A stretch of DNA of 62,912 nt, counting the filler, from Octopus bimaculoides (Eukaryota), in assembly GCF_001194135.2 (NCBI RefSeq). It is 5 parts of 4 records of this genome, joined end to end, with 100 filler letters (N's around TTAATTAATTAA, not from the genome) between each part and the next. Parts side by side here need not be neighbours in the genome. Positions count along the whole stretch, not along the records: positions 20,398 to 50,527 come from NC_068999.1; 4 more parts are not named here. One strand, written 5' to 3'. Below are positions 20,955 to 50,495 of this stretch, piece by piece. A program made the position numbers and the translations under genes. Numbering within the stretch: position 1 is the first letter of the stretch; each line of letters starts with the position of its first letter. The notes beneath the pieces are model-generated. The model ran no database searches and was not told where the DNA came from. It saw nothing but the letters and a program-made list of their open reading frames with translations.

Positions 20955-21055
20955 GAGCCGGTAGAAATGTTAACACGTCGCGCGAAATGCTTAACGGTTT
21001 TTCATCTGTTTTTTACACACCGAGTCCAAATTCCGCCGAAGTCGACATTGACTGT
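20955..21055 (+). mobile_element. SINE 5' fragment (10016/31028 family)
   Basis: gagccggtagaaatgttaacac..gaaatgcttaacgg..aaattccgccgaagtcgac. Confidence 0.7.
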
Positions 21056-21130
21056 CAAGTCACATTTGGCGAACCCTGAATATACATGTTCATGTGTGTG
21101 CGTACGTGCGTGTGCGTGCGTGTGTTAGCA

Positions 21131-21161
<31 letters not shown>

Positions 21162-24100
21162 NNNNNNNNNNNNNNNNNNNNNNNNNNNNNNNNNNNNNNN
21201 NNNNNNNNNNNNNNNNNNNNNNNNNNNNNNNNNNNNNNNNNNNNNNNNNNNNNNNNNNNNNNNNNNNNNNNNNNNNNNNNNNNNNNNNNNNNNNNNNNNN
21301 NNNNNNNNNNNNNNNNNNNNNNNNNNNNNNNNNNNNNNNNNNNNNNNNNNNNNNNNNNNNNNNNNNNNNNNNNNNNNNNNNNNNNNNNNNNNNNNNNNNN
21401 NNNNNNNNNNNNNNNNNNNNNNNNNNNNNNNNNNNNNNNNNNNNNNNNNNNNNNNNNNNNNNNNNNNNNNNNNNNNNNNNNNNNNNNNNNNNNNNNNNNN
21501 NNNNNNNNNNNNNNNNNNNNNNNNNNNNNNNNNNNNNNNNNNNNNNNNNNNNNNNNNNNNNNNNNNNNNNNNNNNNNNNNNNNNNNNNNNNNNNNNNNNN
21601 NNNNNNNNNNNNNNNNNNNNNNNNNNNNNNNNNNNNNNNNNNNNNNNNNNNNNNNNNNNNNNNNNNNNNNNNNNNNNNNNNNNNNNNNNNNNNNNNNNNN
21701 NNNNNNNNNNNNNNNNNNNNNNNNNNNNNNNNNNNTACATATATATATATATATACGCATATATGTGTGTGTGTGTGTCTGTGTATGTGTATGCGTGTGT
21801 GTGTGTGTGTGTGTGTGTGTTTGTGCGTTATATGTTTATCTTCCTGTATATGTATGGAACATACAATTAAGCTGTAGAATAAATCATACTGCATTACTTG
21901 GATAAGTTAATTCTGCAATGAAAATGTGCATAAGACCTTAAGATTTATTTGGAATTTTAATATGATATCTCAGTGACACATACCCTATGAACATGTAGAA
22001 ATATGAGACTATATCACGACAAATGACTACAGAGCCCATGTTCAGCAAATATATAATCCCACATCTTATGTGACACTAATCCAAATGCTGTGAGACAACC
22101 ATCTTTTATTCTTAGAAGATACAGCTCTATATGTATAGGTTTTATATTTCTTAAAATGATCAACGAATCAAGCACAATTCAGCGTTTAGATGATTCGAGA
22201 ATATCCCAGAGAAATCAGCTTTCAGTCAGCAAACTTTGCCAGATTATCCATTTTAGCTTTGGGATTTTTAAAGTGTCTATAATTAAAATTGAATGTTGCT
22301 ATAGGAATTAGTTCAGTGCTGTACACATCCTTAAGAGAGACAACAAAAACGCCATGTTTTTTAATGTACACAATAACATTTTGAAACCTTTGACTTGTTA
22401 CTTTAAAGAAGACTGACGTTCCATAAACAGAATCGTGGTTTGGGTCCGAAAAAAGAGAGTATTTCATTTGTTTATGCTATTTCAAACAATGTCTCAGAGT
22501 TCGTAGCTGACTAGAGTCACCTGTCATTGACGATGCAGTTGCCGCATGACTAGATTTCCTTTTTGTTTTTAATCAGTGATATGTGACAGGCATGCGGTGA
22601 TTGTTTCCGGTTTATTTCTCATCACTCCAATAAAATGATACCACGCCTAGGTAATTTTAATTATTAGGATTAATAAGTTTACGAAAGCACAAATAATACA
22701 TTTGTAAAAAAAAAGAGTTTTGCTTGTTAGATTTGTGAATTATGAAAGGAAATTGTCGTCTAATTTAGAATATTATTCTAATACAGCAGAAAACGGGACA
22801 ACTGGCATATCTTATATAAAATGTCCTTTTGAATAAATACATATCTTTAGTAAATTACGTAGAATTTTATGCAAAATATAATCAATATATTCCAAACCAA
22901 ATCATCCCACTCTTGGTATACCAAAGCAACTCTACGTTAAAAAGAAAAAAAAATGAATAAAATGTTTAATTTGCTTTAAATTAAAATTTATGTCTTCAGG
23001 CGAAAGATAAATTTAGAAAATTATTTACTGCAACAAGTGTAGAGCTGAAAATATAGCGCAATGCTTCGAGTTTTGATGACAGGCCTTGTCCAATATTTGT
23101 AAAACAGATGCAACCTGAGCTGGTATTGCGTAGGTATACTGACAATTGTTATGCGGCTGGGTAAATGCGTTACAAGGCAGCATATATGGAGATCATAAAA
23201 ATAAATACTCAAATAAAAATAAGAAATATAATATTTTACCCATACAATATCATATCTGTAGTATATTTTCTCATAGAAAATAAAAACGCAGAGAGTTTAG
23301 TACATAAAATCTTCTTCAAAGGAAAGTACAGGCGTAAAATAGGAGCGGTAAAGAGTTCTGAATGAACGTTAATGAATAAACTCCATAGGTTCAACTTGGA
23401 ATGAAAAGGGACTGTTTCGAACATCTGGAATCAGATGCGCATTCATAAATGTGAGATATTGTATGTGTTAATATTTTTGTGTTTGTGTGTAGGCTTGCAG
23501 ATGATTTCAAATTGCACCATATGAAAGTCCTTCTGTTTTCTTATATACTTCAGTTACAGGAATGTATAACTTCACTGTTACACAACGGCAGGTGTCCATA
23601 ACAAATTTCTTGTTATCACGTGAGTCCACTTCTTCTGTTTCATATGTGTGTCAATATTACCAAAGTGTATCTAGAATGGTTATACAATAAGGAGAGAGTC
23701 CGACGACAGGAACTGAACTTGTATATATGCATCGTCAAACGTAGTATAATGTAGTCACAATTTAAGCAGTTTTACATGCACAACTCGGAACCTTAATTCT
23801 CTTTAACAGATTACATTCGTCTGTTAGTCCCCTCAATTCATCTGCCTCCGTCAAAAATTCCATAGTTATTCTGGCCGGTTCAACTTTGAAATCCGGCCAG
23901 CAAAGTCTTACCTGTATTCCACTAACACTCTCTCCACAAATATTTACCGAAATGTGGTCTTCCTTTGGTCTCTGTATGATTTCGAATGCAAATCGGTTGC
24001 AGAAAGCCCAGTTATACGGTGATACTCTTAAAACACACCATTATGTTTGAAACACTACACTGCCCGGCGTCCTATTTCTTCTGGACGCTCTATCACATAC

Positions 24101-25128: not shown

Positions 25129-27634
25129 AGGGATGAACTCAAAGCGATGAAGTGATAGGGATGAGATGGTGAGTATCTTTCCCGGTCTGCTAAAACAGCT
25201 CACCGCCTTATATGCTTATGTAATATGGATATGTTACCTCATTCTTACTTTGGCGCAAATTGGTCTATTATGAAAAATGCCCTTAGTTTTCACTTTTGAG
25301 GAGTTTAAAATATTCTTCAGTGTCATATTTATGTATCCTATAAATTAAATATACACACGGTCTAAGAGGCTTTTCAATTTATGGCAGATATTCTGGGGTT
25401 TTTTCCGCCAAAGTCCAACGAAAATAATGGTAAATTAGTAAAGCCCACAGAAAGATAACAGCAGAACACTACACTATTTTTTTCCAATGATATTGTAGAA
25501 GGATAAATTAACGATTGTTGCTCTGAAACACTTTTATTTTTTTGCACCATATCTGATAAAAAACTATGTACTTAACTTCGAAAATGATGGTCAATTACTA
25601 TCAAGAACAATAAAATCGTTCAGCATATTTCGAATTTTGTTTGAAGTCAGACTTCAAGGATTCAAATAAACCGTTTTTCACCTGACCTACCTATGCTTTC
25701 ATAATGTGAAATAGGCAGGAATACATTATACAGGTGATAATTTTACCTGAATACGTTACTAGAGTAGGATCTTTCATCCAATTCAAAGACAGGGGTTATA
25801 ATTATTGAGACCATTGATATTTTAGTATCAAAACAAAAGGGAAGAGGAGAGAAGCAGGCTATAATAAATTAAATCAGCGTAACTGGTTGTTTAAACACTA
25901 CAATAATGTTACATAAAACTTAAACACATATGAGATATTAACAGTTTACGTTCCTCCAGGTTTAATTATGTCCAAGCATAGTCTATAAGTCTATATATGG
26001 TTAGGGACATAATATACAATATAGTGGATGAAATGCTTTAAACAATTAATCAAACAGAAGATTGATTATCCTCTCTCAGTAATTTAAAATCAAATCAAGC
26101 GTTTTTATTCTCATATGAAGAACAACCGGAAATATTTCTTACAAAAATCATCAAACATTCCACACAGAGCTGTTTCCAATGAATGCTTGTATTGAATGCA
26201 ACAGAAACAGGAAAAATATTTCGGGTTTATTAGATTATATTCCTCTTAGTTAACGAGAAGAAACGCTGTTAATGTTTAAATACATAAAACCATGGGCACC
26301 ATCTTTACGAAAGGGACAAAACAGAGCAATGTGCAATATTATAAACAAAAATACGTTATGGAATGATGGATGAGTGGTAGGCAAATTATATAATTAATGT
26401 AATATATTATCAATGAGATAATTTATATTTATCTTTATATAAGAGCGTAGCACCGAAAGCATATTTCCTTCAACGTCACATTGCATAAAGTATGATACAT
26501 GAAACCATCGCAGTCAAAGTTTCACCTGTGTAAACTAACTAGCGAAAGTGCAATAAATAACAAATAGCTCCATGATGACGTTTTGTTACTAATTAAGATT
26601 AGACACAAAAAAAAATAATATTTTGGAATATAGGCAAATTTTGATGATTAGTATTTCAAAATAGAATGAGATTGAGTGATTATCTTGGTATTCTGTATGA
26701 TTACAAATTCAGTAAAACATAAATTGCACTTTATTTAAATATATTTGGAGTAGTAAATAGCATCAGCATTAGCAAACACTATTCAAGATTATATTCACTG
26801 GAAATAAAATTATGCTGTTTCACATCTGGCATACACATAATATGAACATATATAACACATATAAGTGGTATCTGCCTCAGCTGATACGTTTTTCATGCAT
26901 GGAAACTATGTACGCACCGTACTTCGTATATCGAGGTGGACATTAAAAAACAAAAAAAAAAACATGCTTTACTTTGGTGACATTTAAGTGAAGAATTGTA
27001 TGTACGTAACTAAATTTAAAAAAATGTCTTCACTTCTTTCGCAAAAATCGTCCCACACGTCCACGAGAAAAACCTATTAGACAAAGAAATATTAATGAAA
27101 AAATGACACAAAAAAGTTCCAAGTCAGCAATTGGAGGTATATATTAGTCATATTTTGGGGAAAGAAAGTCTAAGATAATTGTGTTTCAATGACGTTTTAT
27201 GTTTGTTTATCTATTTATTAAGGCATAGCACATTTTGACATGATAAAGTTCGATTGTGGACGAGTTGCACTTTAGATTCAGACTGACATTGTACATGACT
27301 CTTTACAGGATGTATGTGTCCTTGTGTTTTTTATGTGTCCATATATATATATATATNNNNNNNNNNNNNNNNNNNNNNNNNNNNNNNNNNNNNNNNNNNN
27401 NNNNNNNNNNNNNNNNNNNNNNNNNNNNNNNNNNNNNNNNNNNNNNNNNNNNNNNNNNNNNNNNNNNNNNNNNNNNNNNNNNNNNNNNNNNNNNNNNNNN
27501 NNNNNNNNNNNNNNNNNNNNNNNNNNNNNNNNNNNNNNNNNNNNNNNNNNNNNNNNNNNNNNNNNNNNNNNNNNNNNNNNNNNNNNNNNNNNNNNNNNNN
27601 NNNNNNNNNNNNNNNNNNNNNNNNNNNNATATAA

Positions 27635-31027: not shown

Positions 31028-31265
31028 AGGTAAGGTGGCGAGCTAGCCGAATTGTTAGCACACCAGGCGAAATGCTTAGCGGTATTTCGTCTGGCGTTAC
31101 GTTCTGAGTTCAAATTCCGCCGAGGTCGACTTTGCCTTTCATTCTTTCGGGGTCGATAAATTAAGTACCAGTTACGCACTGGGGTTGATGTAATCGACTT
31201 AATCCGTTCGTCTGTTCTTGTTTGTTCCCTCTAACGTTTAGCCCGTTGTGGGCAATAACGAAATA
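31028..31265 (+). mobile_element. Near-complete tRNA-derived CORE-like SINE (octopus OR-like)
   Basis: tRNA-like head, then gagttcaaattccgccgaggtcgactttgcctttcattctttcggggtcgataaattaagtaccagtt, then the 3' tail ..ttagcccgttgtgggcaataacgaaata. The family name is from memory. Confidence 0.85.
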
Positions 31266-31267
31266 TG

Positions 31268-31435
31268 TATTTCGTCTGCAGCTAAATTCTGATTTCAAAT
31301 TCCGCCGATGTCTACTTTGCTTTTCTTCCTATCGAGGTCGATGAAATAAGTACCACTTACACACTGGTGTCGATATAATCGACTGTCCTTTCCCCCAAAT
31401 TTTCAGGTCTTGTGCTTACAACACAAAGGATTATA
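31268..31435 (+). mobile_element. Second, 5'-truncated SINE directly in tandem
   Basis: tatttcgtctgc..aaattccgccgatgtc..gaggtcgatgaaataagtacc, with a different 3' end (cccccaaattttcaggtcttgtgc). Confidence 0.75.
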
Positions 31436-34400
31436 ATAATGCAGCTAGCTTACACACGTTCAATATATTTGCTATCGTGGGCGTCATGAAACATATTCCG
31501 TCTTTAATACAACCCTTAGAAAATGAAATTGTGTGCAGTCTAATAAGAATTTATAATTCTGGGAGGAGAACTGCATGATGTCATTCCAATTACTATAACT
31601 AAAGTATTCAGATACGTCTCCTAAAATCACAAGAGCAGATTGACTTCTTAAGAAATTCTAATGTAATATGAGAATATGCAGTTGAACTAAGTTGAGCCAG
31701 ATATAAACATGCAGGAAACATTCATGACATGTAGTGTTAAATAGAATATATATTGAATATATACTACATACGCACGCGGACACTCACAGTTACATACATA
31801 CATACGCACACACATATATGAATGCATATGGACATATATATCTATACGNNNNNNNNNNNNNNNNNNNNNNNNNNNNNNNNNNNNNNNNNNNNNNNNNNNN
31901 NNNNNNNNNNNNNNNNNNNNNNNNNNNNNNNNNNNNNNNNNNNNNNNNNNNNNNNNNNNNNNNNNNNNNNNNNNNNNNNNNNNNNNNNNNNNNNNNNNNN
32001 NNNNNNNNNNNNNNNNNNNNNNNNNNNNNNNNNNNNNNNNNNNNNNNNNNNNNNNNNNNNNNNNNNNNNNNNNNNNNNNNNNNNNNNNNNNNNNNNNNNN
32101 NNNNNNNNNNNNNNNNNNNNNNNNNNNNNNNNNNNNNNNNNNNNNNNNNNNNNNNNNNNNNNNNNNNNNNNNNNNNNNNNNNNNNNNNNNNNNNNNNNNN
32201 NNNNNNNNNNNNNNNNNNNNNNNNNNNNNNNNTATACATATATATGAAGACAACAGAAGTTTGGGGATTTTACAACACCTGTGTCAGACGTGTTTTTCCT
32301 GGTGAACATAACTGTTACATTATAAAAAAATAATGAACGTTTTTAACAGGTTACAATTAACAATTAGAACTCCTCAAGCAAAAGAACATAGGGTAAGATG
32401 ACTCAGCCGACACAAATTTAGTAAGAAGTATTTGGGCTGGTTGTGTGATCAGGCAGTTTGTTCTTTTTCTTGAAAAGTTCTAATTGTTAATTACTATCTG
32501 TATTCACATGTTCATGCATAAGAGACTCAAACAGCTGTAGCGAACTGCAATTCTATTGTTGTTCTTATTTCTTTTTCACCTTATTCGGAACCGACAATAC
32601 ATTTGGATCTGGTGTCTGTAGTCGATGGTGTAATTGGTGCAGTGAGTGTACCCATGGATGTTTCTGATTACCCGATGGGATTTCCTTCAGCCCCTTATGA
32701 ATATATGCGTAACTAGATGAAGAAGTCTATATTTGCTTTAGTGAGTACGCATATGTCATTATACAATATTAGTACGAGTCGGGCTTTCACCATTACCATC
32801 TTGGTGATTTATGGATTTACATCCCAGTAGAGGTTTGCCATTTCTGTATCCACTTTGTAATGTACGTTTTATAATTGATATACGCCATATATTCAGGCAT
32901 ATAACACAAATTTTCTGTACATAATGATGTATTACGAATGAGAGACTCACCTATTGAGGCTGTATTACGAATGAGAGACTAAATCTTGTTGACCACGAAG
33001 ATGGGTGACAAAAGGTTATTCGATAAATCGATTGTTAATGATTATAAATAGATGTTATCATCATTACTGTATAAGAAGTGCAGGAACAGAGACGGAAATT
33101 TCATTGCTTACATATATTTTTCATTTCCGACATTAGGGATTTCGCAAAATACATGGAGCTCCTTCGATGGAGAGACCTATATTTATTACATCTTCATATG
33201 TATACCGGATGAAATGACATGGAATCATCATTTTCAGTCATCAAATCGAACAATACATAAATACACAATGTTTTGTACTTAGAACGGATTAATTGATCAG
33301 ATGAGAAATCATGATGTATTTTTCGTTGCTCTGCTTCCACTGTTAAGCCGATCTAGGAAGCGCAAGCATATTTTAATTTTAAATAAAATTTATCTAAATG
33401 TTTACTAATTACTTGTACTAGTCATAACAACTCATGAATGTACCAATGCGAAGGAAATATAAGTTGAATAGTTGTTGATTGACGGATTTCAATAGCAATT
33501 TCATTGCAAACTCAGAACTAGGCAGTTAATAAGACGTTTAAATAATTAAAAAAAAAATAGAATGAATTCTAACAAATAAGCTCATGACATAATTACGTTT
33601 CGTATACACAAATACCAGTGGATGTTGTACGGCAAATCAGATGAAAGTATTTTTCAATAAATGAAATACTGGAAAACTTACTAAAGTATCTTAACAAAAT
33701 CCTTGGCGGTATATGGAACAATGCCATTAAGGATATAAATGCATTATAACGAATACTAGAAAGACACCCTGGAAAGAGTCGTCAACTTTCTTTGAAATAA
33801 TATGTGGCAAAGAAATCGGCTTAGAATTATATTCTTCCTTAAGGAAGACATCAAACATCTTTTCGATTTCAAGTGGTTTTATTCACGTTTCTCTTTCGGG
33901 TTTTGTGCGTAAATGTTCCAAATGTCTGCTAACAAAATATTGAATAAAATATTTCCATTTTTTTAATCTTAATTTTGTCAGTATAGAAATGTTACTATTT
34001 GGATATAAGCGTATGCCTTTTATATGTGCGTGAACGAAAGACACACGTAGAGACTGAGATAAAGAAAAATGAAGTGTGTAGGTCTATCTACCTGTGTATA
34101 TGTGTGCATGTATATATATATATATATATAATAAAGTAAAGTTGTGGAATACCGTACGAGTGGAAATATATATGAAAGAAAGTTTGAAAATGCACTTATT
34201 TTTAAAAAATATTTATTTNNNNNNNNNNATATATATATATGTATATATAAGCAGGCTGAAATTAAATTGCATCATGTATATGACACGCTTGACATTTTGA
34301 TTTGCCTTTGGTAGCATTCTTTAGTAATTAACTCGTAGTGTTTATAACTGATAATTAATTGTCACTATACCTTTTCCATGCTTGAATTTTAAGTTTTTCA

Positions 34401-35339: not shown

Positions 35340-35535
35340 AAATTTAGCCTCAACGGGGTAAATGCTCAGCGTCATTTCATCTGTCTTTACGTTCTGAGTT
35401 CAAATCCTGTAGAAGTTTGTTTGACATGTCATCATTTCCATTTCGATAATATATGTACTAGTTGAGTACTGGGATTGATACAATCGTCTGGCACACTTCA
35501 ACTAAATTGCTGGCTTCATGCCAAAAATTAAAACT
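35340..35535 (+). mobile_element. Diverged SINE
   Basis: aaatgctcagcg..ttacgttctgagttcaaatcc..gttgagtactggg..aaattgctggc. Confidence 0.65.
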
Positions 35536-36539
35536 AATATCTATTCCCGATCATCAAGCTGAAATTGGGTCACATTAGCTTTGCCATTTATTCCTTATAA
35601 ACACCGTAGTTATGTAATGGATATATTTATGTTTATATGGTCCCCACCACAACATTCCTGCCTTTCGTCTTATGTATGGAATTAATTTTATACGTCTTAA
35701 ATACCGATGTTCGTCTTACATACCGATGCATGTACAAAATATAAGTTTTTAAATTCAAACATGGCCAGCGAAAAATATTGTATTCATGAAACTAGGAAAA
35801 AGGTAAATACCTGTCTACTAAGCACCAGTTCATTATTCAGTCAACTATTCAGGTCATTTTACCATCGCTCTTACTAAATATGTGGACTTATGTCAGAACA
35901 GATCATTAGAAACGGATGAACATTACCAGAAATTGTATTTTCCTTGCGTTGGAAAGAAGACATGAGATTTATTGCACAAGCGATCTTAAAATCGTCAGTT
36001 TCTTTCGTTGTTCAAATGTAATATCTTTATATATATATCTTCGATCTGTTATATGTGATGAAGAATTAATTGTCCTGCATCTTAGCTACGGGAGTAATTT
36101 TATATGTGTTGGGGTTTTTGTCTGAATTTTAGATGAAATACGTTTTGCCTTGATCAATGTCACTCCCTTATTTTGATATAACTACACATGACATTTATGC
36201 ACCGAGGCTTTTTAATTACATTTTTCATTGTACTGTTCTGACGTTTACTGTTATATCGCCTAATCCAGCTATAAATGTTTCTCGTTTTTGTAGTTTACTA
36301 CAGTCAGTACGGCACGAAGACAACATTAACGACTTCTTACAGCCAATATAGAGATAGCACCAGGTGATGGTCACTATATGTATGCATCTGCGTGTCTGTG
36401 CACATGTGCGTGTGAATGAATATGTATGTACGTATGCGTATTGTGCATCGGGGTGGGGTGATTTTCACAATAATAATCGTGTGCGCTTGTTCTAGTTCAC
36501 TTCATTTTGTTACTGCTGCTGTTATTATTGTTGTATTTG

Positions 36540-36670
36540 TTGTAGCTTTATTGTTGTTATTATTATCATTATCATCAACATCAACAACACCATAATCATC
36601 ATGATCATGATGATGATGATGATCGCCATCATCATCATCATCATTATCATCATCATCATCATCATCATCG

Positions 36671-36735
<65 letters not shown>
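36540..36735. repeat. (ATC)n/(ATG)n/(ATT)n trinucleotide array
   Basis: Directly visible. Confidence 0.95.
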
Positions 36736-37309
36736 TCGTTCCACACCGAACCATATTTTTTCCTACAAAATGCCGGAGATAGTACCAATCCATGCACTTA
36801 TATTAATACTTATATTAATTTTCATGTGTGTAAATTGTTTCACGGTTTGTACATCAGTTCAGTGTTATAGAACCAAATTTATCAGACATTTTTCTTCAGA
36901 ATCTTTTTTTTATATATAATCCCTGAGTGAAGTTCAATTCTATGCCAGATTTCCAATTTCATTTACTTTTCATTGTGTGCAGTTCAAATCGGGATTTTTA
37001 GCATTGTTCCACTGCGTGAGATCCGGATCCGCCTCGCCAGTAAGATGTCTCTCTCCATGACGACGTATTTCGTCGTCTGCGTGACTCGCCCAAACAGCGT
37101 ACTTCGCTGACAGTATTTCTTTATTTAGCACATACGCCATGATACAGAGGCGGACGGCACAAGGACAGACATAACACCACAGTGGAGACAAAGAACGTAA
37201 CGTGATTGAATGAAGGATAAATAATAATTAATGAGAATGTAATGGTTGCTTGAACCTCACTCTTAGGCAGTACCATTTAACTGTTTCATTAAAAAGTTTT
37301 TTATATCAT

Positions 37310-38934: not shown

Positions 38935-39019
38935 ATTGTTCTTGTTGCTATTGTTGTTGTTGTAGTAGTAGTAGTGATGCTGGTGGTGGTGGTAGTAGCA
39001 GTAGTAGTAGTAGTAGTAT

Positions 39020-39066
<47 letters not shown>

Positions 39067-39067
39067 A

Positions 39068-39104
<37 letters not shown>

Positions 39105-39120
39105 CGCAGTAGTAGTATAT
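38935..39120. repeat. (TAG)n/(TTG)n trinucleotide array
   Basis: Directly visible. Confidence 0.95.
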
Positions 39121-39689
39121 GCAATATCATATGCCACTTTATTTCGTTACGATCGTTTGCCAAACAACAAAAATAAGCGATAGATCCGTATACAATAAGT
39201 TCCCCATTCATGTGAAGTTTTCAAATACGACGTAAAATGTTTAGATAATGAGGAGTGTTGCGGATTTTATTTTACCTTTTTAGATTCAAATATCTAATGA
39301 TGTGCAATTAAAGTGGAAATTTCTTGTATAATCATAGGATTTCTCTATCATGAATTAATGTGAATGTTATTATTGAATTAGAAACATATATATTACTCGA
39401 AATCAAATTAATTACACTAGGATAATGATATTGTCAAGGTTATACGAGATTATACTAAATTTCAGTTAAATAGGAAAACAATTTATGAAATTATTCGTTT
39501 AATACTGTAACATTCTGTGAATTAATTCATATTCGTTTCTTGATCATACATTAATCTTTTACATTGCAGAAATGAAAATTATGATATTCCGTATATATGA
39601 TTGCATGTGGATTCATATATGCATACATATATATATCGTATGTATACATTCAAAAGGCGTTGAGCAGGCTGAACCTTTACCCCCACCCC

Positions 39690-39872
39690 ACCAGGCAAAA
39701 GGCTGGGTGGCATTCCTTCGGACTCTACGTTCTGTGTTGATATTTCGCTGAGATTGGCTTTACCTTCCATTCATTTTGGGGTCGATAAAATAAGTCCCAG
39801 TTGAGCACTGGGTACAATGTGATTGACCTGTCGTCCGACATACCTGCTGGCCTTGTGCAGAGAATTTGAACC
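39690..39872 (+). mobile_element. Diverged SINE abutting the foldback
   Basis: tacgttctgtg..ttttggggtcgataaaataagtcccagttgagcactggg..gctggccttgtgc..aatttgaacca. Confidence 0.7.
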
Positions 39873-41019
39873 AGTATATTTATAACTGTTAAAGGGGACA
39901 ACAAATGATAACGCAAGATAAACTTCTCAAGTCATATACGTTATTATTATTAGAAAAATTTCAAGACTTACACCTGTTTCTGTGATAACCCGAAATATGG
40001 GAGAAAATAGGGAAAATGTGATGGGCATAAGATGAAGGAAACACGGAAATAAAGGACTGGAGAAAAGGAACGAAGGAAAAGAAGAAAAAAGAAGCATAAA
40101 AGTTCAAAGTTCAATTTCCCAATTTTGTAGATGATAGCCAATAAGTCCTTAGGTGCAATCCAATATATATATATATCCATGTACGGTTACAGCATTCATA
40201 TTGTAAATGTTAAGAGATAAACGCTAATATATCGATGGTTCATAAGAGAATAATATCTGAAGTGGCCATTGAGGGATAAAGATAAAAAAAATTCAATAGT
40301 AAGAAAGAAAGGTACTGGTAGGGAAGGTGGAGATACAGAGAGTGGAGGAGGAATGCAAGGATTGGTATGGAGGATAAGTTATGTAAAGATATTCTGTAGA
40401 TGATAAATAAAGAATTATATTAGGGTAAATAAATCTGGATTATCTTTATTTACCTGTTTAGTTTTGTACGTTATAATCATTATAATTTTATATACCTTAT
40501 TTTATCCCCCATACCAATCCTTGCATTCTTCCTCCACTCACTGTATTTCCAGCTTCCCTACCAATACCTTTTTCTCTTTCTATTTATTTCTTTTTCTCTG
40601 TCCCTCAATTGCCAATTCTGCTATTGTTCTCTTATGAACCATCAATATCTTCGAGTTCATCACTGGATATTTACAGTATGAATGCTATAACCATACACGG
40701 ATTTACATAGAATTGCACCTAAGGACATATGGAATAACGTCTACACTATTCGAAAGTTTAACTGTGACCATTTATGCTTCTTCTTTCTTCGTTTACTTAA
40801 TTTCTTTATTCCTTTTCTCCAGTCCTTTATTTCATCATTTCCTTAATCAATATTCTTCACATTTTTCCTATATGTCTCCGATGACGGGATATCGCATATT
40901 TTGGGATATACCAGAAGCAGGTGTAAGACTTTAAATTTTTCTAATAATAATAGCGTATATGACTCGAGATGTTTGTCTTCCCTTACCGTTTGTTGTCCTC
41001 TTTAACAATGATATATCTG
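39872..41019. repeat. About 1.15 kb diverged foldback palindrome (arms about 560 bp, loop 11 nt)
   Basis: Mirror blocks run throughout: tgttaaaggggacaacaaa/tttgttgtcctctttaaca, ccttaggtgcaat/attgcacctaagg, gatggttcataagagaa/ttctcttatgaaccatc, gaatgcaaggattggtatgg/ccataccaatccttgcattc. The innermost stem is ggtaaataaa (40424-33)/tttatttacc (40445-54). Confidence 0.92.
40874..40929 (+). ncRNA. Degenerate hammerhead ribozyme in the right arm of the foldback
   Basis: GTCT-CcGATGA-[ggatatc..gatatacc]-GAAg-C-AGGT-GTA-AGAC, with two core transitions. The mirror arm keeps GAAACAGGTGTA intact (39980-39969, minus strand). Confidence 0.55.
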
Positions 41020-45863: not shown

Positions 45864-45978
45864 TAAAATAAAATAAAAATAATAACAATATAGAAAAACA
45901 ATTTACCTATTGTAACTTACAATAACTATGAAAAAAGAATATACAAAAAAAATTGTTTTAGCAATAAATAAACAAATG

Positions 45979-46418
45979 TTCGAAAAGCATTTAACGATCT
46001 TTCTTAAAATCAAATCATAATTTATATACATATATTTTATATTTGGAAATTTGATTTAGTTTTGATAAATTGAATTTTTTCCCTGTCAGTTTGGATTTTA
46101 TTCCCTAAAATTATTATTATATATATGTAAAAATATGTCACACTTATTCGGTAGCAACGATAAAACTCCGAGTTTCGGATGCCGTAATTTTCAATGGCCA
46201 GATATCTGAAGAGATGGTGGCGTGTGTTTCCACCCCAGCATCCGAAACTCGGAGATTAATCATGGTTACCGAATATATAATAATAATTTTAAGGAATAAA
46301 ATCCAAACTTACAGGGAAAAAAATCAATTTACCAAAACTAAATCAAATTTCCAAATATAAAATATATGCATATACATTATGATTTTATTTTAAGAAAGAT
46401 CGTTAAATGCATTTCGAA
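45979..46418. repeat. About 440 bp foldback (arms 45979-46182 and 46238-46418), probably an inverted Penelope-type terminal repeat pair
   Basis: ttcgaaaagcatttaacgatctttcttaaaat..ctccgagtttcggatgc is mirrored by gcatccgaaactcggag..aagaaagatcgttaaatgcatttcgaa. The arms are only lightly diverged. Confidence 0.93.
46198..46265 (+). ncRNA. Degenerate hammerhead-like motif at the foldback centre
   Basis: CTGAAGA (46206-12), GATG..CATC, cGAAAC (GAAA at 46244-47), TCGGAG. The stem III junction is disrupted on this strand but intact (GAAACTCGGAGTT) on the mirror strand. Confidence 0.4.
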
Positions 46419-46569
46419 GATTTTCAAAAATACTTTTACACATAAATTCCTCTATTTACAATATATCGAGGTCTCTTTCTTTCTTTAGTCGTCTTTTCTA
46501 TCAATATATACGTACATACATATATACATACGTATAGAAAACAATGTGTATGCTTTCTAAATATGTGAT

Positions 46570-46760: not shown

Positions 46761-48231
46761 ATATCACTCACCATCAGTAGCTGCACGAATGTTAATAAAA
46801 TAGTATTATATATTTTTTTTCTAATGCTATTTTGCAAAATGATCAACACAACACCATAATCACATTTATTGCTGCCAGCTAAGCAGAATCACCGTCGGTC
46901 ATTTTACTGACAAACAAATCATTGACATCTAAGAAAAAACAAAATCGTCAACGATATAACCACTGCCACCACTGTCAATGTCAGTAAATCCGACAAAACA
47001 TGTATCAGCACTCACGTCTATCATCGCCAGATATATAACAGCAGCCACCACCCCCAACACCACCACGATCAAATCTAGCATCAATAACGTTACCTTCAAA
47101 TACGCTTCATGCATGGAGAAAGAATGTAGAACATCCATAGCATTATATCTACGTCAAAACCACTCTCCTGTATACAAAAAGCCTATCCCTTTAGTTAATT
47201 CTCGTTCTGCAAATTCCATCAGAATAAATGTCAGAACATCTAGGAATTAGCGAATAATTTGATCGTTTGGTGTACATCTATAAGACGCAGGTGACCTATT
47301 CCGATGTTACTTGGAAAGATAATTTGACACAAACATGTTGGAATATTCCAATGTATTTCCAGACCAAGAAATAATACAGTAAATAACATTATGGTAAATA
47401 AGGAAGAACCAGAAAAGAAGGAAGAAAGGAAAAGAAGAAATTGCAGAGGTTATAATCACGAAGCAATTCAAGCAAGAGTAGACCATGATTTTCTCGATTA
47501 TGCATATATATATATATATATATATATATANNNNNNNNNNNNNNNNNNNNNNNNNNNNNNNNNNNNNNNNNNNNNNNNNNNNNNNNNNNNNNNNNNNNNN
47601 NNNNNNNNNNNNNNNNNNNNNNNNNNNNNNNNNNNNNNNNNNNNNNNNNNNNNNNNNNNNNNNNNNNNNNNNNNNNNNNNNNNNNNNNNNNNNNNNNNNN
47701 NNNNNNNNNNNNNNNNNNNNNNNNNNNNNNNNNNNNNNNNNNNNNNNNNNNNNNNNNNNNNNNNNNNNNNNNNNNNNNNNNNNNNNNNNNNNNNNNNNNN
47801 NNNNNNNNNNNNNNNNNNNNNNNNNNNNNNNNNNNNNNNNNNNATATATGTATGTATGTATTATATGTTTCTGCATGAAGCGACTGAGGACATGGCGGCA
47901 TCAAAATAAAACCTGGTTATATATGTAAAGGTCAAGCAAGTTAACCCTTGAGGTAAGTTATTTCAAAATACCCAGTAGCATGACACATGATTTGTATAAA
48001 AGAAGTGGAGTGTTTTTAAAATAGTTGGAATGATGTTCAACAGCTAAACAGAATGATTGATAGAAGCAATGTATGCGAAAGAAACCACAAAAATATATCT
48101 TTAAGTGCGTATGCTTCCATACATATATTACATTGCATAGATGCATATATACATGCAGGCGTACACACGTACACGCCCGCACACACACACACACACATAC
48201 ATACACACACTCTCACACACACACACACACT

Positions 48232-49012: not shown

Positions 49013-50495
49013 TATATGAACATGAAATGTTGATTGTTATAAGAGAGCAGAGATGTAATAGAAGTAAGCGTTAGGCATGGTTTGATGTGTTTAGGACAGA
49101 ACGGAATTTTTATTGATGTAAAGTCTCGAAAATTGAATCCTAAAGTTGTTTTGCTTTCTTTAGGTGTCTCTGAGACATTGGTCATACTCGTGACTTTCAA
49201 TATATGTCTGTATCGTTCTGTAAATATTATGCCTATCACAGATTTCCCTTGCGTACTAGCACATATTCTCTCGAAATATTTGAACCTTATCGCTGGCGAT
49301 AATTTTTACAGGATTAATCTATTTTCTATATATGCATGCGCGCGCGTGCGTATCTGTGTCTGTTTGTGGGTGGGTGTGTCTGTTTGTGGGTGGGTGCGTC
49401 TGTGTTTGTTCCCGCACGTGCAGTCATAGATTTAATGTAGACTCTCACCTATTCATTCTCCGGTGTGTTTTATCACTTATATATATTTTGTACATGACAC
49501 GAGTTGTAGGTCTAAACTGTTAGCTGTTTAACGCTCAACTCGCAGTTCTTCTGTTCAGGGTAAATCTGCCTCTCGCATGACTTTCAACATATCATAAGAG
49601 AGAGCATGTAAACTTTACGTAAACATTTAACTAAATGAATAATGGAAGTCATTAACACAGGAATTAATGTGCATTGTAACTAAATTTTAGAGCGATAAAA
49701 TCGTAGAAATGTAAATAATCCAGTTTTACCAAAATTGGAGGCATTCTTAAATTATTCTTTGTAAAACCTGCAAAATATTTCACACGGCATGTCAGCGATT
49801 AAAACGAAAACGCAGAGATAAGACAATAGCATTCCAAATTACGTTTCTTTATGTAATTTCACAGAAGGATATTTAGTAGAGATAGTGCAAAGAATGTTGT
49901 CTTTTTTATATCTTCAGCAAACAAAGGATGTGGAAAGGTAAGGAAACATATGTTCCTATACATATACGCACATACACACACACACACACACACATACACA
50001 TTTACATCATACGCACACACACATATACATATGTATGTATCTATNNNNNNNNNNTGTGTGTGTGTTTGTATATATATATCTATATATACAACCATTGCAA
50101 ATCAAATGATGCTATTAAAAGCTAAAACGGTGCATGTCTAGACAAACTAATTTCAGAATCGGAAAATTTTGTGTGCAATTATATGAAATAGTTTGCTTTG
50201 TAGAGTTATTAAGTTGTTAATTCTGTTGGGAAATATCAATACTTATTCTCTTATGGAGACAATATGGCAGACAATTTGTCGCTTTCTTGCTTCTGGTGAA
50301 TATGTTACGACCATTTAACATGCGATTCAACGCATTTGGCTTAGGAAGAAAGAGAATTAAAAATAAATATTATTGCATCCATGAGTACACATTTGGATGA
50401 AAACACGTATACATGCACAAAACCAAACTTATATAGACGCAGGTTTCTAAACATACACTAACATGTTCACACGCAAATACGCATTCATATATGCA

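What the first reader, a model, noticed from the sequence alone, without database searches (positions are those of the whole stretch)
39872..41019. Giant, old, ORF-less foldback palindrome with an 11 nt loop
Seen: two arms of about 560 bp are collinear from end to end and meet at an 11 nt loop. They are substantially diverged, with frequent mismatches and indels by eye, and one arm is purine-rich while the other is pyrimidine-rich. Known: long palindromes with tiny loops are usually unstable, and coleoid cephalopods edit long imperfect dsRNA extensively through ADAR. Inference: an old inverted duplication that would form about 0.5 kb of imperfect dsRNA if transcribed on either strand.
Basis: partly seen in the sequence, partly recalled or inferred. 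Interest (0 to 1): 0.7.

Follow-up and report, generated by a model that had tools for sequence, protein, structure and literature searches.

The report
Old non-coding 1.15 kb foldback palindrome
This is a real but decaying 1.15 kb inverted duplication with no coding capacity, most likely a dead foldback-type repeat or a one-off replication error, and it is one of three such hairpin-forming stretches in 30 kb, so it is ordinary.

Summary
Window 39872-41019 is one imperfect palindrome. Its arms are 562 and 575 nt, with 82.7% identity at aligned positions, 16 indel events and a K2P distance of 0.197. They meet at a perfect 10-bp stem around an 11-nt loop that lies on the symmetry centre of the outer arms. 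Either strand folds into one hairpin of about 470 bp (-551 kcal/mol on the + strand, z = -39). There is no ORF over 73 aa, no Pfam domain, and no Rfam family at gathering score.

Nothing suggests selection for the structure. G:U-compatible mismatches are balanced between strands (23 vs 20), transversions outnumber transitions, and indels create bulges. It is also not exceptional locally: two unrelated foldbacks lie in the same 30 kb (45974-46423 and 32346-32501).

Its origin is unresolved. It is either a degenerate copy of a palindromic non-autonomous element inserted in the TA-rich tail of the adjacent SINE-like repeat, or a local fold-back duplication. The only target-site-duplication candidate is low-complexity TATAT, and no collection available here holds the host genome.

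Transcription, ADAR editing and the host taxon could not be tested. Published work already reports that octopus is unusually rich in such dsRNA-forming loci, so interest is low.

The parts
39872..40433 (+). Left arm (purine-rich: 42.5% A, 22% G). The first 8 nt (39872-39879, CAGTATAT) probably belong to the tail of the adjacent SINE-like repeat.
   Evidence: Global arm alignment, local alignment, SINE copy alignments.
40445..41019 (+). Right arm, the inverted copy of the left arm (pyrimidine-rich).
40424..40454 (.). Apex: perfect 10-bp stem GGTAAATAAA / TTTATTTACC around the 11-nt loop TCTGGATTATC (40434-40444). Its centre (40439) matches the symmetry centre of the outer arms (40439.5).
   Evidence: Predicted as the terminal hairpin on the + strand (MFE and centroid); on the - strand it appears in the centroid only, the MFE closing with a wider stem and 29-nt loop.
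40378..40423 (.). Inner left segment (46 nt, AT-rich) whose match to its partner 40455-40501 is not above chance.
   Evidence: score 20 against 17.7 +/- 3.8 for shuffles.
40455..40501 (.). Inner right segment (47 nt), partner of 40378-40423.
40880..40894 (.). 15-nt stretch (GATGACGGGATATCG) present only in the right arm. It is the largest of the 16 indel events and forms a bulge or side hairpin in the predicted fold.
   Evidence: Alignments; fold.
39875..39879 (.). TATAT, the left copy of the only candidate target-site duplication. Low complexity, so ambiguous.
41012..41016 (.). TATAT, the right copy of the candidate target-site duplication.
39660..39879 (+). SINE-like dispersed repeat abutting the left arm. 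Other copies lie at about 20964-21057, 31049-31199, 31267-31384 and 35360-35489.
   Evidence: Self-BLAST; alignments.

Best explanation
The block was made in a single fold-back (inverted-duplication) event and has since decayed neutrally. It codes for nothing. Its most likely identity is a dead copy of a palindromic, non-autonomous DNA element (foldback or MITE-like) that landed in the TA-rich 3' tail of a SINE-like repeat. Shown: one collinear inverted duplication, arm-to-arm distance of about 0.2, no coding capacity, no strand-biased preservation of pairing, and strong predicted hairpins on both strands. Inferred: mobile-element origin. Also inferred: an age of about 25-30 My, obtained by applying the octopus repeat clock of PMC13282606 (JC 0.09 is about 25 My, 0.2 is about 56 My) to about 0.1 substitutions per arm. 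Consequence, not purpose: if the region lies in a transcript, either strand would fold into about 470 bp of imperfect dsRNA with helices up to 32 bp. In an animal with active ADARs that duplex would be a hyper-editing substrate, as described for self-folding palindromic repeats.
For: Both arms have the same end points and run collinearly to an 11-nt loop, so there was one event rather than two insertions. Divergence looks neutral: 43 transitions against 51 transversions, 16 indels, and G:U-compatible mismatches of 23 on the + strand against 20 on the - strand. No ORF exceeds 73 aa, and no Pfam domain was found among the stop-to-stop ORFs of at least 40 aa that were scanned across the whole piece (low-complexity ones excluded). 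No Rfam family reaches gathering score. MFE is -551 / -544 kcal/mol, z = -38.9, against -201 to -260 for neighbouring stretches of equal length. Two further, unrelated, discrete foldbacks of MITE-like size lie in the same 30 kb: 45974-46423 with 151-nt outer arms at 94%, and 32346-32501. The left end abuts the TA-rich tail of a SINE-like repeat, and TATAT flanks 39880-41011 on both sides, as expected for insertion into a TA-rich target. PMC13282606 places a burst of TIR elements at JC 0.09 in Octopus vulgaris, close to the ~0.1 per arm seen here. PMC5625713 documents hyper-editing of self-folding palindromic repeats and the high density of such loci in octopus.
Against: No second copy of the arm exists in the 30 kb piece, and no host genome could be searched, so multi-copy status, the defining property of a mobile element, is untested. 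The TATAT 'duplication' is low complexity and self-complementary in register, so it could equally be part of the palindrome or chance. No terminal motif of a known superfamily was recognised. At 1148 bp the block is larger than typical MITEs. The arms contain no tandem subrepeats such as classical foldback elements have.
Confidence: 0.5

Rival explanations
1. A local, single-copy inverted duplication. During replication or break repair the nascent strand folded back at a pre-existing short inverted repeat (the 10-bp stem and 11-nt loop now at the apex) and copied about 560 nt of its own strand. It then switched back near the TA-rich stretch at the SINE tail. The product never transposed.
For: A perfect short inverted repeat sits at the symmetry centre, as fold-back priming models require. 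There is no convincing target-site duplication and no recognisable terminal motif. No other copy lies in the piece. The outer end lies in TA-rich, self-complementary sequence that could mediate the second template switch.
Against: The coincidence of the arm end with the SINE 3' end within about 8 bp needs a special explanation. This reading does not explain why two other unrelated discrete foldbacks lie within 30 kb, unless the genome is generally prone to such events. Immediately after such an event the arms should be perfect right up to the apex stem, yet the inner 46-47 nt are now the least alike.
Confidence: 0.38
2. A functional long-hairpin RNA gene, either an hpRNA-like source of small RNAs or a structured non-coding RNA maintained as an ADAR substrate.
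For: There is very strong hairpin potential on either strand with a short loop, which is the geometry of Drosophila hpRNA loci.
Against: Pairing is not preserved in a strand-biased way (23 vs 20 G:U-compatible mismatches). Transversions exceed transitions, and 16 indels include a 15-nt bulge. Rfam gives only sub-threshold, generic hairpin matches to plant miRNA models. PMC12479628 found no evidence of a dedicated endo-siRNA pathway in molluscs, including O. bimaculoides. No similarity to any other sequence in the piece could serve as a target.
Confidence: 0.05
3. Two independent insertions of the same dispersed repeat in opposite orientation, like an inverted Alu pair.
For: Inverted repeat pairs are the commonest source of dsRNA in animal genomes (PMC5625713). 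The A-rich, C-poor composition of the left arm resembles a retroelement sense strand.
Against: Both arms start and end at the same positions, are collinear over about 560 nt, and are separated by only 11 nt with a stem at the centre. Independent insertions would not share truncation points or abut so precisely. No third copy lies in the piece.
Confidence: 0.04
4. An assembly artefact, such as a chimeric read or a collapsed hairpin.
For: The piece is a draft assembly with several N gaps.
Against: Artefactual palindromes have near-identical arms. These differ at 17% of aligned sites and by 16 indels.
Confidence: 0.02

Closest known systems
Self-folding palindromic DNA-transposon repeats, e.g. 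the ~200-bp palindromic Harbinger repeats of Xenopus tropicalis (Porath et al. 2017, PMC5625713)
   Same: The whole unit is an approximate palindrome with a very short loop. It is non-coding and folds on itself into tight dsRNA without needing a neighbouring inverted copy. That paper shows such repeats are hyper-edited by ADAR.
   Different: The block is five times longer (1148 bp). Arm identity is 83%, not near-perfect: the best 40-column window is 92.5%, below that paper's >95% over at least 40 bp criterion. Family membership, copy number and editing are untested here.
Drosophila Foldback (FB) elements and foldback-like transposons
   Same: Long inverted arms make up almost the whole element, with no coding capacity.
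   Different: FB arms are built of tandem subrepeats and are flanked by a 9-bp target duplication (my knowledge). Here Tandem Repeats Finder reports only one 16-bp, 2.3-copy array inside the arms (40099-40114) and nothing resembling FB subrepeats, and only an ambiguous 5-bp TATAT flanks the block.
Drosophila hpRNA loci (endo-siRNA-producing long hairpins)
   Same: Inverted arms of several hundred bp with a short loop, thought to arise by inverted duplication.
   Different: hpRNAs are transcribed, diced and matched to target genes. None of that is testable here. Molluscs show no evidence of an endo-siRNA pathway (PMC12479628).
Inverted duplications from fold-back priming or template switching at short inverted repeats (palindromic amplification, FoSTeS/MMBIR-type events; my knowledge)
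   Same: A short inverted repeat sits at the centre of a larger palindrome, with no target-site duplication.
   Different: Those events are usually described as large or chromosome-scale, or somatic. This is an interstitial 1.1-kb germline product that has persisted for roughly 0.1 substitutions per site per arm.
Inverted Alu/SINE pairs as ADAR substrates
   Same: Imperfect long dsRNA formed from repeat-derived sequence, with the same expected fate of hyper-editing if transcribed.
   Different: Those are two separate insertions with a variable spacer. This is one unit with an 11-nt loop and identical arm end points.

Membership tests
MITE / non-autonomous TIR transposon (palindromic type) | Terminal inverted repeats | tested here: met
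   The arms are inverted copies over about 560 nt. The outer 100 columns are 86% identical.
MITE / non-autonomous TIR transposon (palindromic type) | Target-site duplication flanking the element | tested here: inconclusive
   The only direct repeat at the ends is TATAT (39875-79 / 41012-16). It is low complexity and also compatible with being part of the palindrome.
MITE / non-autonomous TIR transposon (palindromic type) | Multiple dispersed copies in the genome | not testable with these tools
   There is no other copy in the 30-kb piece. The metagenome, prokaryote-genome, viral and protein collections do not hold the host: control searches with the SINE-like repeat also found nothing.
MITE / non-autonomous TIR transposon (palindromic type) | No coding capacity | tested here: met
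   The longest ORF is 73 aa and there are no Pfam hits.
MITE / non-autonomous TIR transposon (palindromic type) | Small size (usually under about 800 bp) | tested here: not met
   The block is 1148 bp. The two other foldbacks in the piece, at 450 and 156 bp, do fit.
Drosophila-type Foldback element | Arms composed of tandem subrepeats | tested here: not met
   Tandem Repeats Finder reports only a 16-bp, 2.3-copy array inside the arms.
hpRNA / long-hairpin small-RNA locus | Transcription and Dicer-phased small RNAs, with homology to a target gene | not testable with these tools
   No expression data are available. No similar sequence occurs elsewhere in the piece.
hpRNA / structured RNA under selection | Pairing preserved preferentially on the transcribed strand (excess of G:U-compatible changes) | tested here: not met
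   23 (+ strand) against 20 (- strand) G:U-compatible mismatches, transitions/transversions 43/51, 16 indels.
Curated RNA families (Rfam 15) | Score at or above the family gathering threshold | tested here: not met
   No hits at gathering score. Only plant miRNA hairpin models appear, at 24-39 bits against thresholds of 64-85.
Fold-back (template-switch) inverted duplication | Short inverted repeat at the centre of symmetry | tested here: met
   A perfect 10-bp stem with an 11-nt loop is centred at 40439, against the arm symmetry centre of 40439.5. Only 3.8% of shuffled spacers hold any 10-bp stem.
Fold-back (template-switch) inverted duplication | Single-copy locus; the ancestral or orthologous locus carries one arm only | not testable with these tools
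   No related genome is reachable.
ADAR hyper-editing substrate (as defined operationally in PMC5625713 and PMC9989829) | Reverse-oriented match within 2 kb at >=65% identity, or >=80% over >=50 nt | tested here: met
   Ungapped arm segments of 125 nt at 84%, 98 nt at 87% and 123 nt at 80%.
ADAR hyper-editing substrate (as defined operationally in PMC5625713 and PMC9989829) | 'Nearly perfect' dsRNA: >95% identity over >=40 bp | tested here: not met
   The best 40-column window is 92.5%. The longest exact run is 23 nt.
ADAR hyper-editing substrate (as defined operationally in PMC5625713 and PMC9989829) | Clustered A-to-G mismatches in RNA reads | not testable with these tools
   No RNA-seq access.

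The most novel reading that the evidence does not exclude
The hairpin is a transcribed long-hairpin RNA locus retained across octopod species. It could be, for example, a dedicated hyper-edited dsRNA that titrates or reports ADAR activity, or a mollusc counterpart of hpRNA loci. In that case its imperfect pairing would be tuned to avoid dsRNA sensing rather than being plain decay.
Probability: 0.04. Interest if true: 0.6.

Novelty: new member of a known kind. Interest (0 to 1): 0.15.

Why it matters
This single locus matters little. It is one more long imperfect inverted repeat in a repeat-rich animal genome, with no sign of constraint. Its modest value is as an example. If the window is from an octopus, loci of this kind are the raw material behind the exceptionally high hyper-editing signal reported for Octopus bimaculoides (PMC5625713). 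Three unrelated foldbacks in 30 kb raise a question: is that abundance due to palindromic mobile elements or to a high rate of fold-back duplication? A genome-wide census could answer that, but this locus alone cannot.

Tried and rejected
1. Exact-pattern scans with blocks conserved between the arms. The metagenome and viral collections gave 0 hits. The prokaryote genomes gave one 20-mer in a Planctomycetia MAG, with no similarity beyond 21 nt, so a chance match.

2. Recovering other copies through ORF calls. Exact look-ups of the 73-aa and 70-aa arm ORFs and a homology search with the 73-aa ORF found nothing.

3. Positive controls with the abundant SINE-like repeat. A 23-mer against the metagenomes and an 86-aa SINE-derived ORF against the protein collection also found nothing. 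The collections therefore lack this host, and all the negatives above are uninformative. The host taxon could not be confirmed.

4. A full-text search for the SINE core sequence in papers gave 0 hits.

5. A search for exons or transposon proteins anywhere in the piece, to anchor orthologous loci. No Pfam hit was found among the 204 stop-to-stop ORFs of at least 40 aa that passed a low-complexity filter (of 285).

6. Rfam and tRNA scans found nothing meaningful.

7. Testing whether the palindrome continues beyond the SINE, or the SINE continues beyond the palindrome, which would prove insertion. Scores were at shuffle level.

8. A piggyBac-type TTAA duplication was rejected. The TTAA near each end is internal, because palindromic similarity continues for about 11 nt outside it (read).

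Full report
**Observation.** The sequence at 39872-41019 is a genuine imperfect palindrome.
- Ungapped seeds already give four collinear arm segments at 72-87% complementarity.
- A local gapped alignment pairs 39878-40377 with 40502-41016, with 408 matches, 82 mismatches and 35 gap columns.
- A global alignment of 39872-40433 against the reverse complement of 40445-41019 gives 450 matches, 94 mismatches and 49 gap columns in 16 indel events. That is 82.7% identity at aligned positions and K2P 0.197. The local score is 473 against 27 +/- 3 for shuffled arms.
- BLAST of the piece against itself aligns 39878-41016 to its own reverse complement as one HSP.
- The apex is the perfect 10-bp stem GGTAAATAAA/TTTATTTACC around the 11-nt loop TCTGGATTATC at 40434-40444.
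- The left arm is 64.8% purine and the right arm 35.7%. That is simply what inverting a strand-asymmetric sequence produces.

**Corrections to the observation.**
- The 46-47 nt on each side between the well-matched arms and the apex stem are no more alike than shuffled sequence. Collinearity through the centre therefore rests on three facts. Those stretches are of equal length. The apex stem is centred at 40439, against the arm symmetry centre of 40439.5. Only 3.8% of shuffled spacers hold any 10-bp stem at all.
- The first 8 nt on the left (CAGTATAT) align with the 3' tails of other copies of the SINE-like repeat that abuts the palindrome. The arm proper probably begins near 39880.

**Structure.**
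- As RNA, each strand folds into a single long hairpin, at -551.3 kcal/mol (+) and -544.1 kcal/mol (-).
- The + strand value is 38.9 standard deviations below 60 dinucleotide shuffles. Neighbouring stretches of equal length give -201 to -260 kcal/mol.
- The + strand fold has 468 base pairs in 68 helices, the longest being 32 bp.
- The best 40-column window of the arm alignment is 92.5% identical and the longest exact run is 23 nt.
- The duplex therefore meets the '>=65% identity' and '>=80% over >=50 nt' definitions of potential dsRNA used in PMC5625713 and PMC9989829. It does not meet the 'nearly perfect' criterion of >95% over at least 40 bp in PMC5625713.

**What it is not.**
- No ORF exceeds 73 aa.
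- The 204 stop-to-stop ORFs of at least 40 aa that passed a low-complexity filter (of 285 in the piece) give no Pfam hit at E <= 0.1. There is no exon or transposon protein nearby.
- No tRNA was found, and no Rfam family reaches gathering score. In E-value mode only plant miRNA hairpin models appear, far below threshold, which reflects generic hairpin shape.
- The arms contain no tandem subrepeats.
- It is not an assembly artefact, because artefactual palindromes have near-identical arms.

**Constraint.** With only two arms, the available test is whether mismatches preferentially keep pairing on one strand.
- G:U-compatible mismatches number 23 on the + strand and 20 on the - strand.
- Transversions (51) exceed transitions (43).
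- There are 16 indel events, including a 15-nt insertion at 40880-40894.
- This pattern is unconstrained decay. It does not exclude transcription, but it gives no support for a maintained RNA structure.

**Age (inference).** Each arm is about 0.1 substitutions per site from the ancestor. On the repeat clock used for Octopus vulgaris (JC 0.09 is about 25 My, 0.2 is about 56 My; PMC13282606), that is about 25-30 My, near the reported burst of TIR elements. This assumes the window is from an octopod, which I could not verify, and it assumes no gene conversion between the arms.

**Context.**
- The palindrome is not unique locally. Self-BLAST and the inverted-repeat scan reveal two other discrete foldbacks unrelated in sequence. 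One is 45974-46423, with 151-nt outer arms at 94% and a predicted hairpin of -227 kcal/mol. The other is 32346-32501, with 72-nt arms at 74% and a 12-nt loop.
- A SINE-like repeat with at least five copies in the piece ends where the left arm begins.

**Origin: shared ground.** The equal end points of the arms and the 11-nt spacing show one fold-back event, not two insertions. Whether the product was mobile is unresolved.

**Origin: for a palindromic non-autonomous element.**
- It has discrete boundaries.
- Other MITE-sized foldbacks lie nearby.
- It is positioned in the TA-rich tail of a SINE.
- TATAT lies on both sides of 39880-41011.

**Origin: against a mobile element, and for a local template-switch duplication.**
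- The TATAT is low complexity.
- No terminal motif was recognised.
- There is no second copy in the piece.
- A perfect short inverted repeat sits at the centre, as fold-back priming requires.

**Origin: tests that failed.** Attempts to show that the SINE continues beyond the palindrome, or that the palindrome continues beyond the SINE, gave scores at shuffle level.

**Origin: weighting.** I put the mobile-element reading at about 0.5 and the local duplication at about 0.38.

**External evidence.**
- No reachable collection holds the host genome.
- Conserved arm blocks found nothing in the metagenome or viral contigs. They found one chance 20-mer in a Planctomycetia MAG.
- Arm ORFs are not on record and have no homologues.
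- Controls with the abundant SINE-like repeat were also empty, so these negatives say nothing about copy number.

**Likely behaviour.** The locus probably has no function of its own. If it lies in a transcribed region, the RNA would fold on itself with a very short loop.
- Porath et al. (PMC5625713) show that approximately palindromic repeats, such as the Xenopus ~200-bp Harbinger repeats, are heavily hyper-edited without needing a neighbouring inverted copy.
- The same paper reports that O. bimaculoides has the strongest hyper-editing signal. It also has the highest fraction of loci with reverse-oriented near-identical matches within 2 kb (4.4e-3) among the 19 species compared.
- PMC12479628 found no evidence of an endo-siRNA pathway in molluscs and suggests editing as the fate of long dsRNA.
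- If the host is an octopus, ADAR editing is therefore the expected fate rather than dicing. This is inference.

**Verdict.** The feature is real, old and non-coding. It belongs to a known and, in the presumed host, very common kind of locus, with no evidence of selection. Interest is low.

Noticed in passing
window 45974-46423: A second discrete foldback, unrelated in sequence to the focal one. Its outer arms are 151 nt at 94% complementarity, with a central region of about 148 nt that is itself partly palindromic. The predicted hairpin is -227 kcal/mol. It looks like a younger MITE-like element.
   Followed up: partly
window 32346-32501: A third small foldback of about 156 bp, with 72-nt arms at 74% and a 12-nt loop. 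TTAA lies at both ends of the core CAATTAGAAC...GTTCTAATTG, which could be a piggyBac-type target duplication or simply part of the palindrome.
   Followed up: partly
window 39660-39879; also about 20964-21057, 31049-31199, 31267-31384, 35360-35489: A SINE-like dispersed repeat with at least five diverged copies in 30 kb. The conserved core is ...GGTCGATAAAATAAGTACCAGTTGAGCACTGGGG.... Two copies (31049-31199 and 31267-31384) lie head to tail. ARAGORN calls no tRNA in any copy.
   Followed up: partly
window 38962-39117: A long (GTA)n microsatellite of about 51 units, 750 bp upstream of the palindrome.
   Followed up: no
window 21162-21735, 27357-27628, 31849-32232, 47531-47843 (also 10-N runs at 34219-34228 and 50045-50054): Assembly gaps (runs of N). 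The four long ones are each bordered by TA/CA-type microsatellites, typical of a short-read draft that breaks at simple repeats. The repeat finder reports these N runs as spurious 'inverted repeats'.
   Followed up: no
window 36502-36870: A block of trinucleotide-type simple repeats that translates into long runs of I, N or D in different frames. It is low-complexity DNA, not a gene.
   Followed up: no
L001 6263-6283 (Planctomycetia MAG CAYZNX010000015.1): A 20-21-nt exact match to the conserved arm block GAATGCAAGGATTGGTATGG. About one such hit is expected by chance in 596 Gb, and there is no extended similarity.
   Followed up: yes
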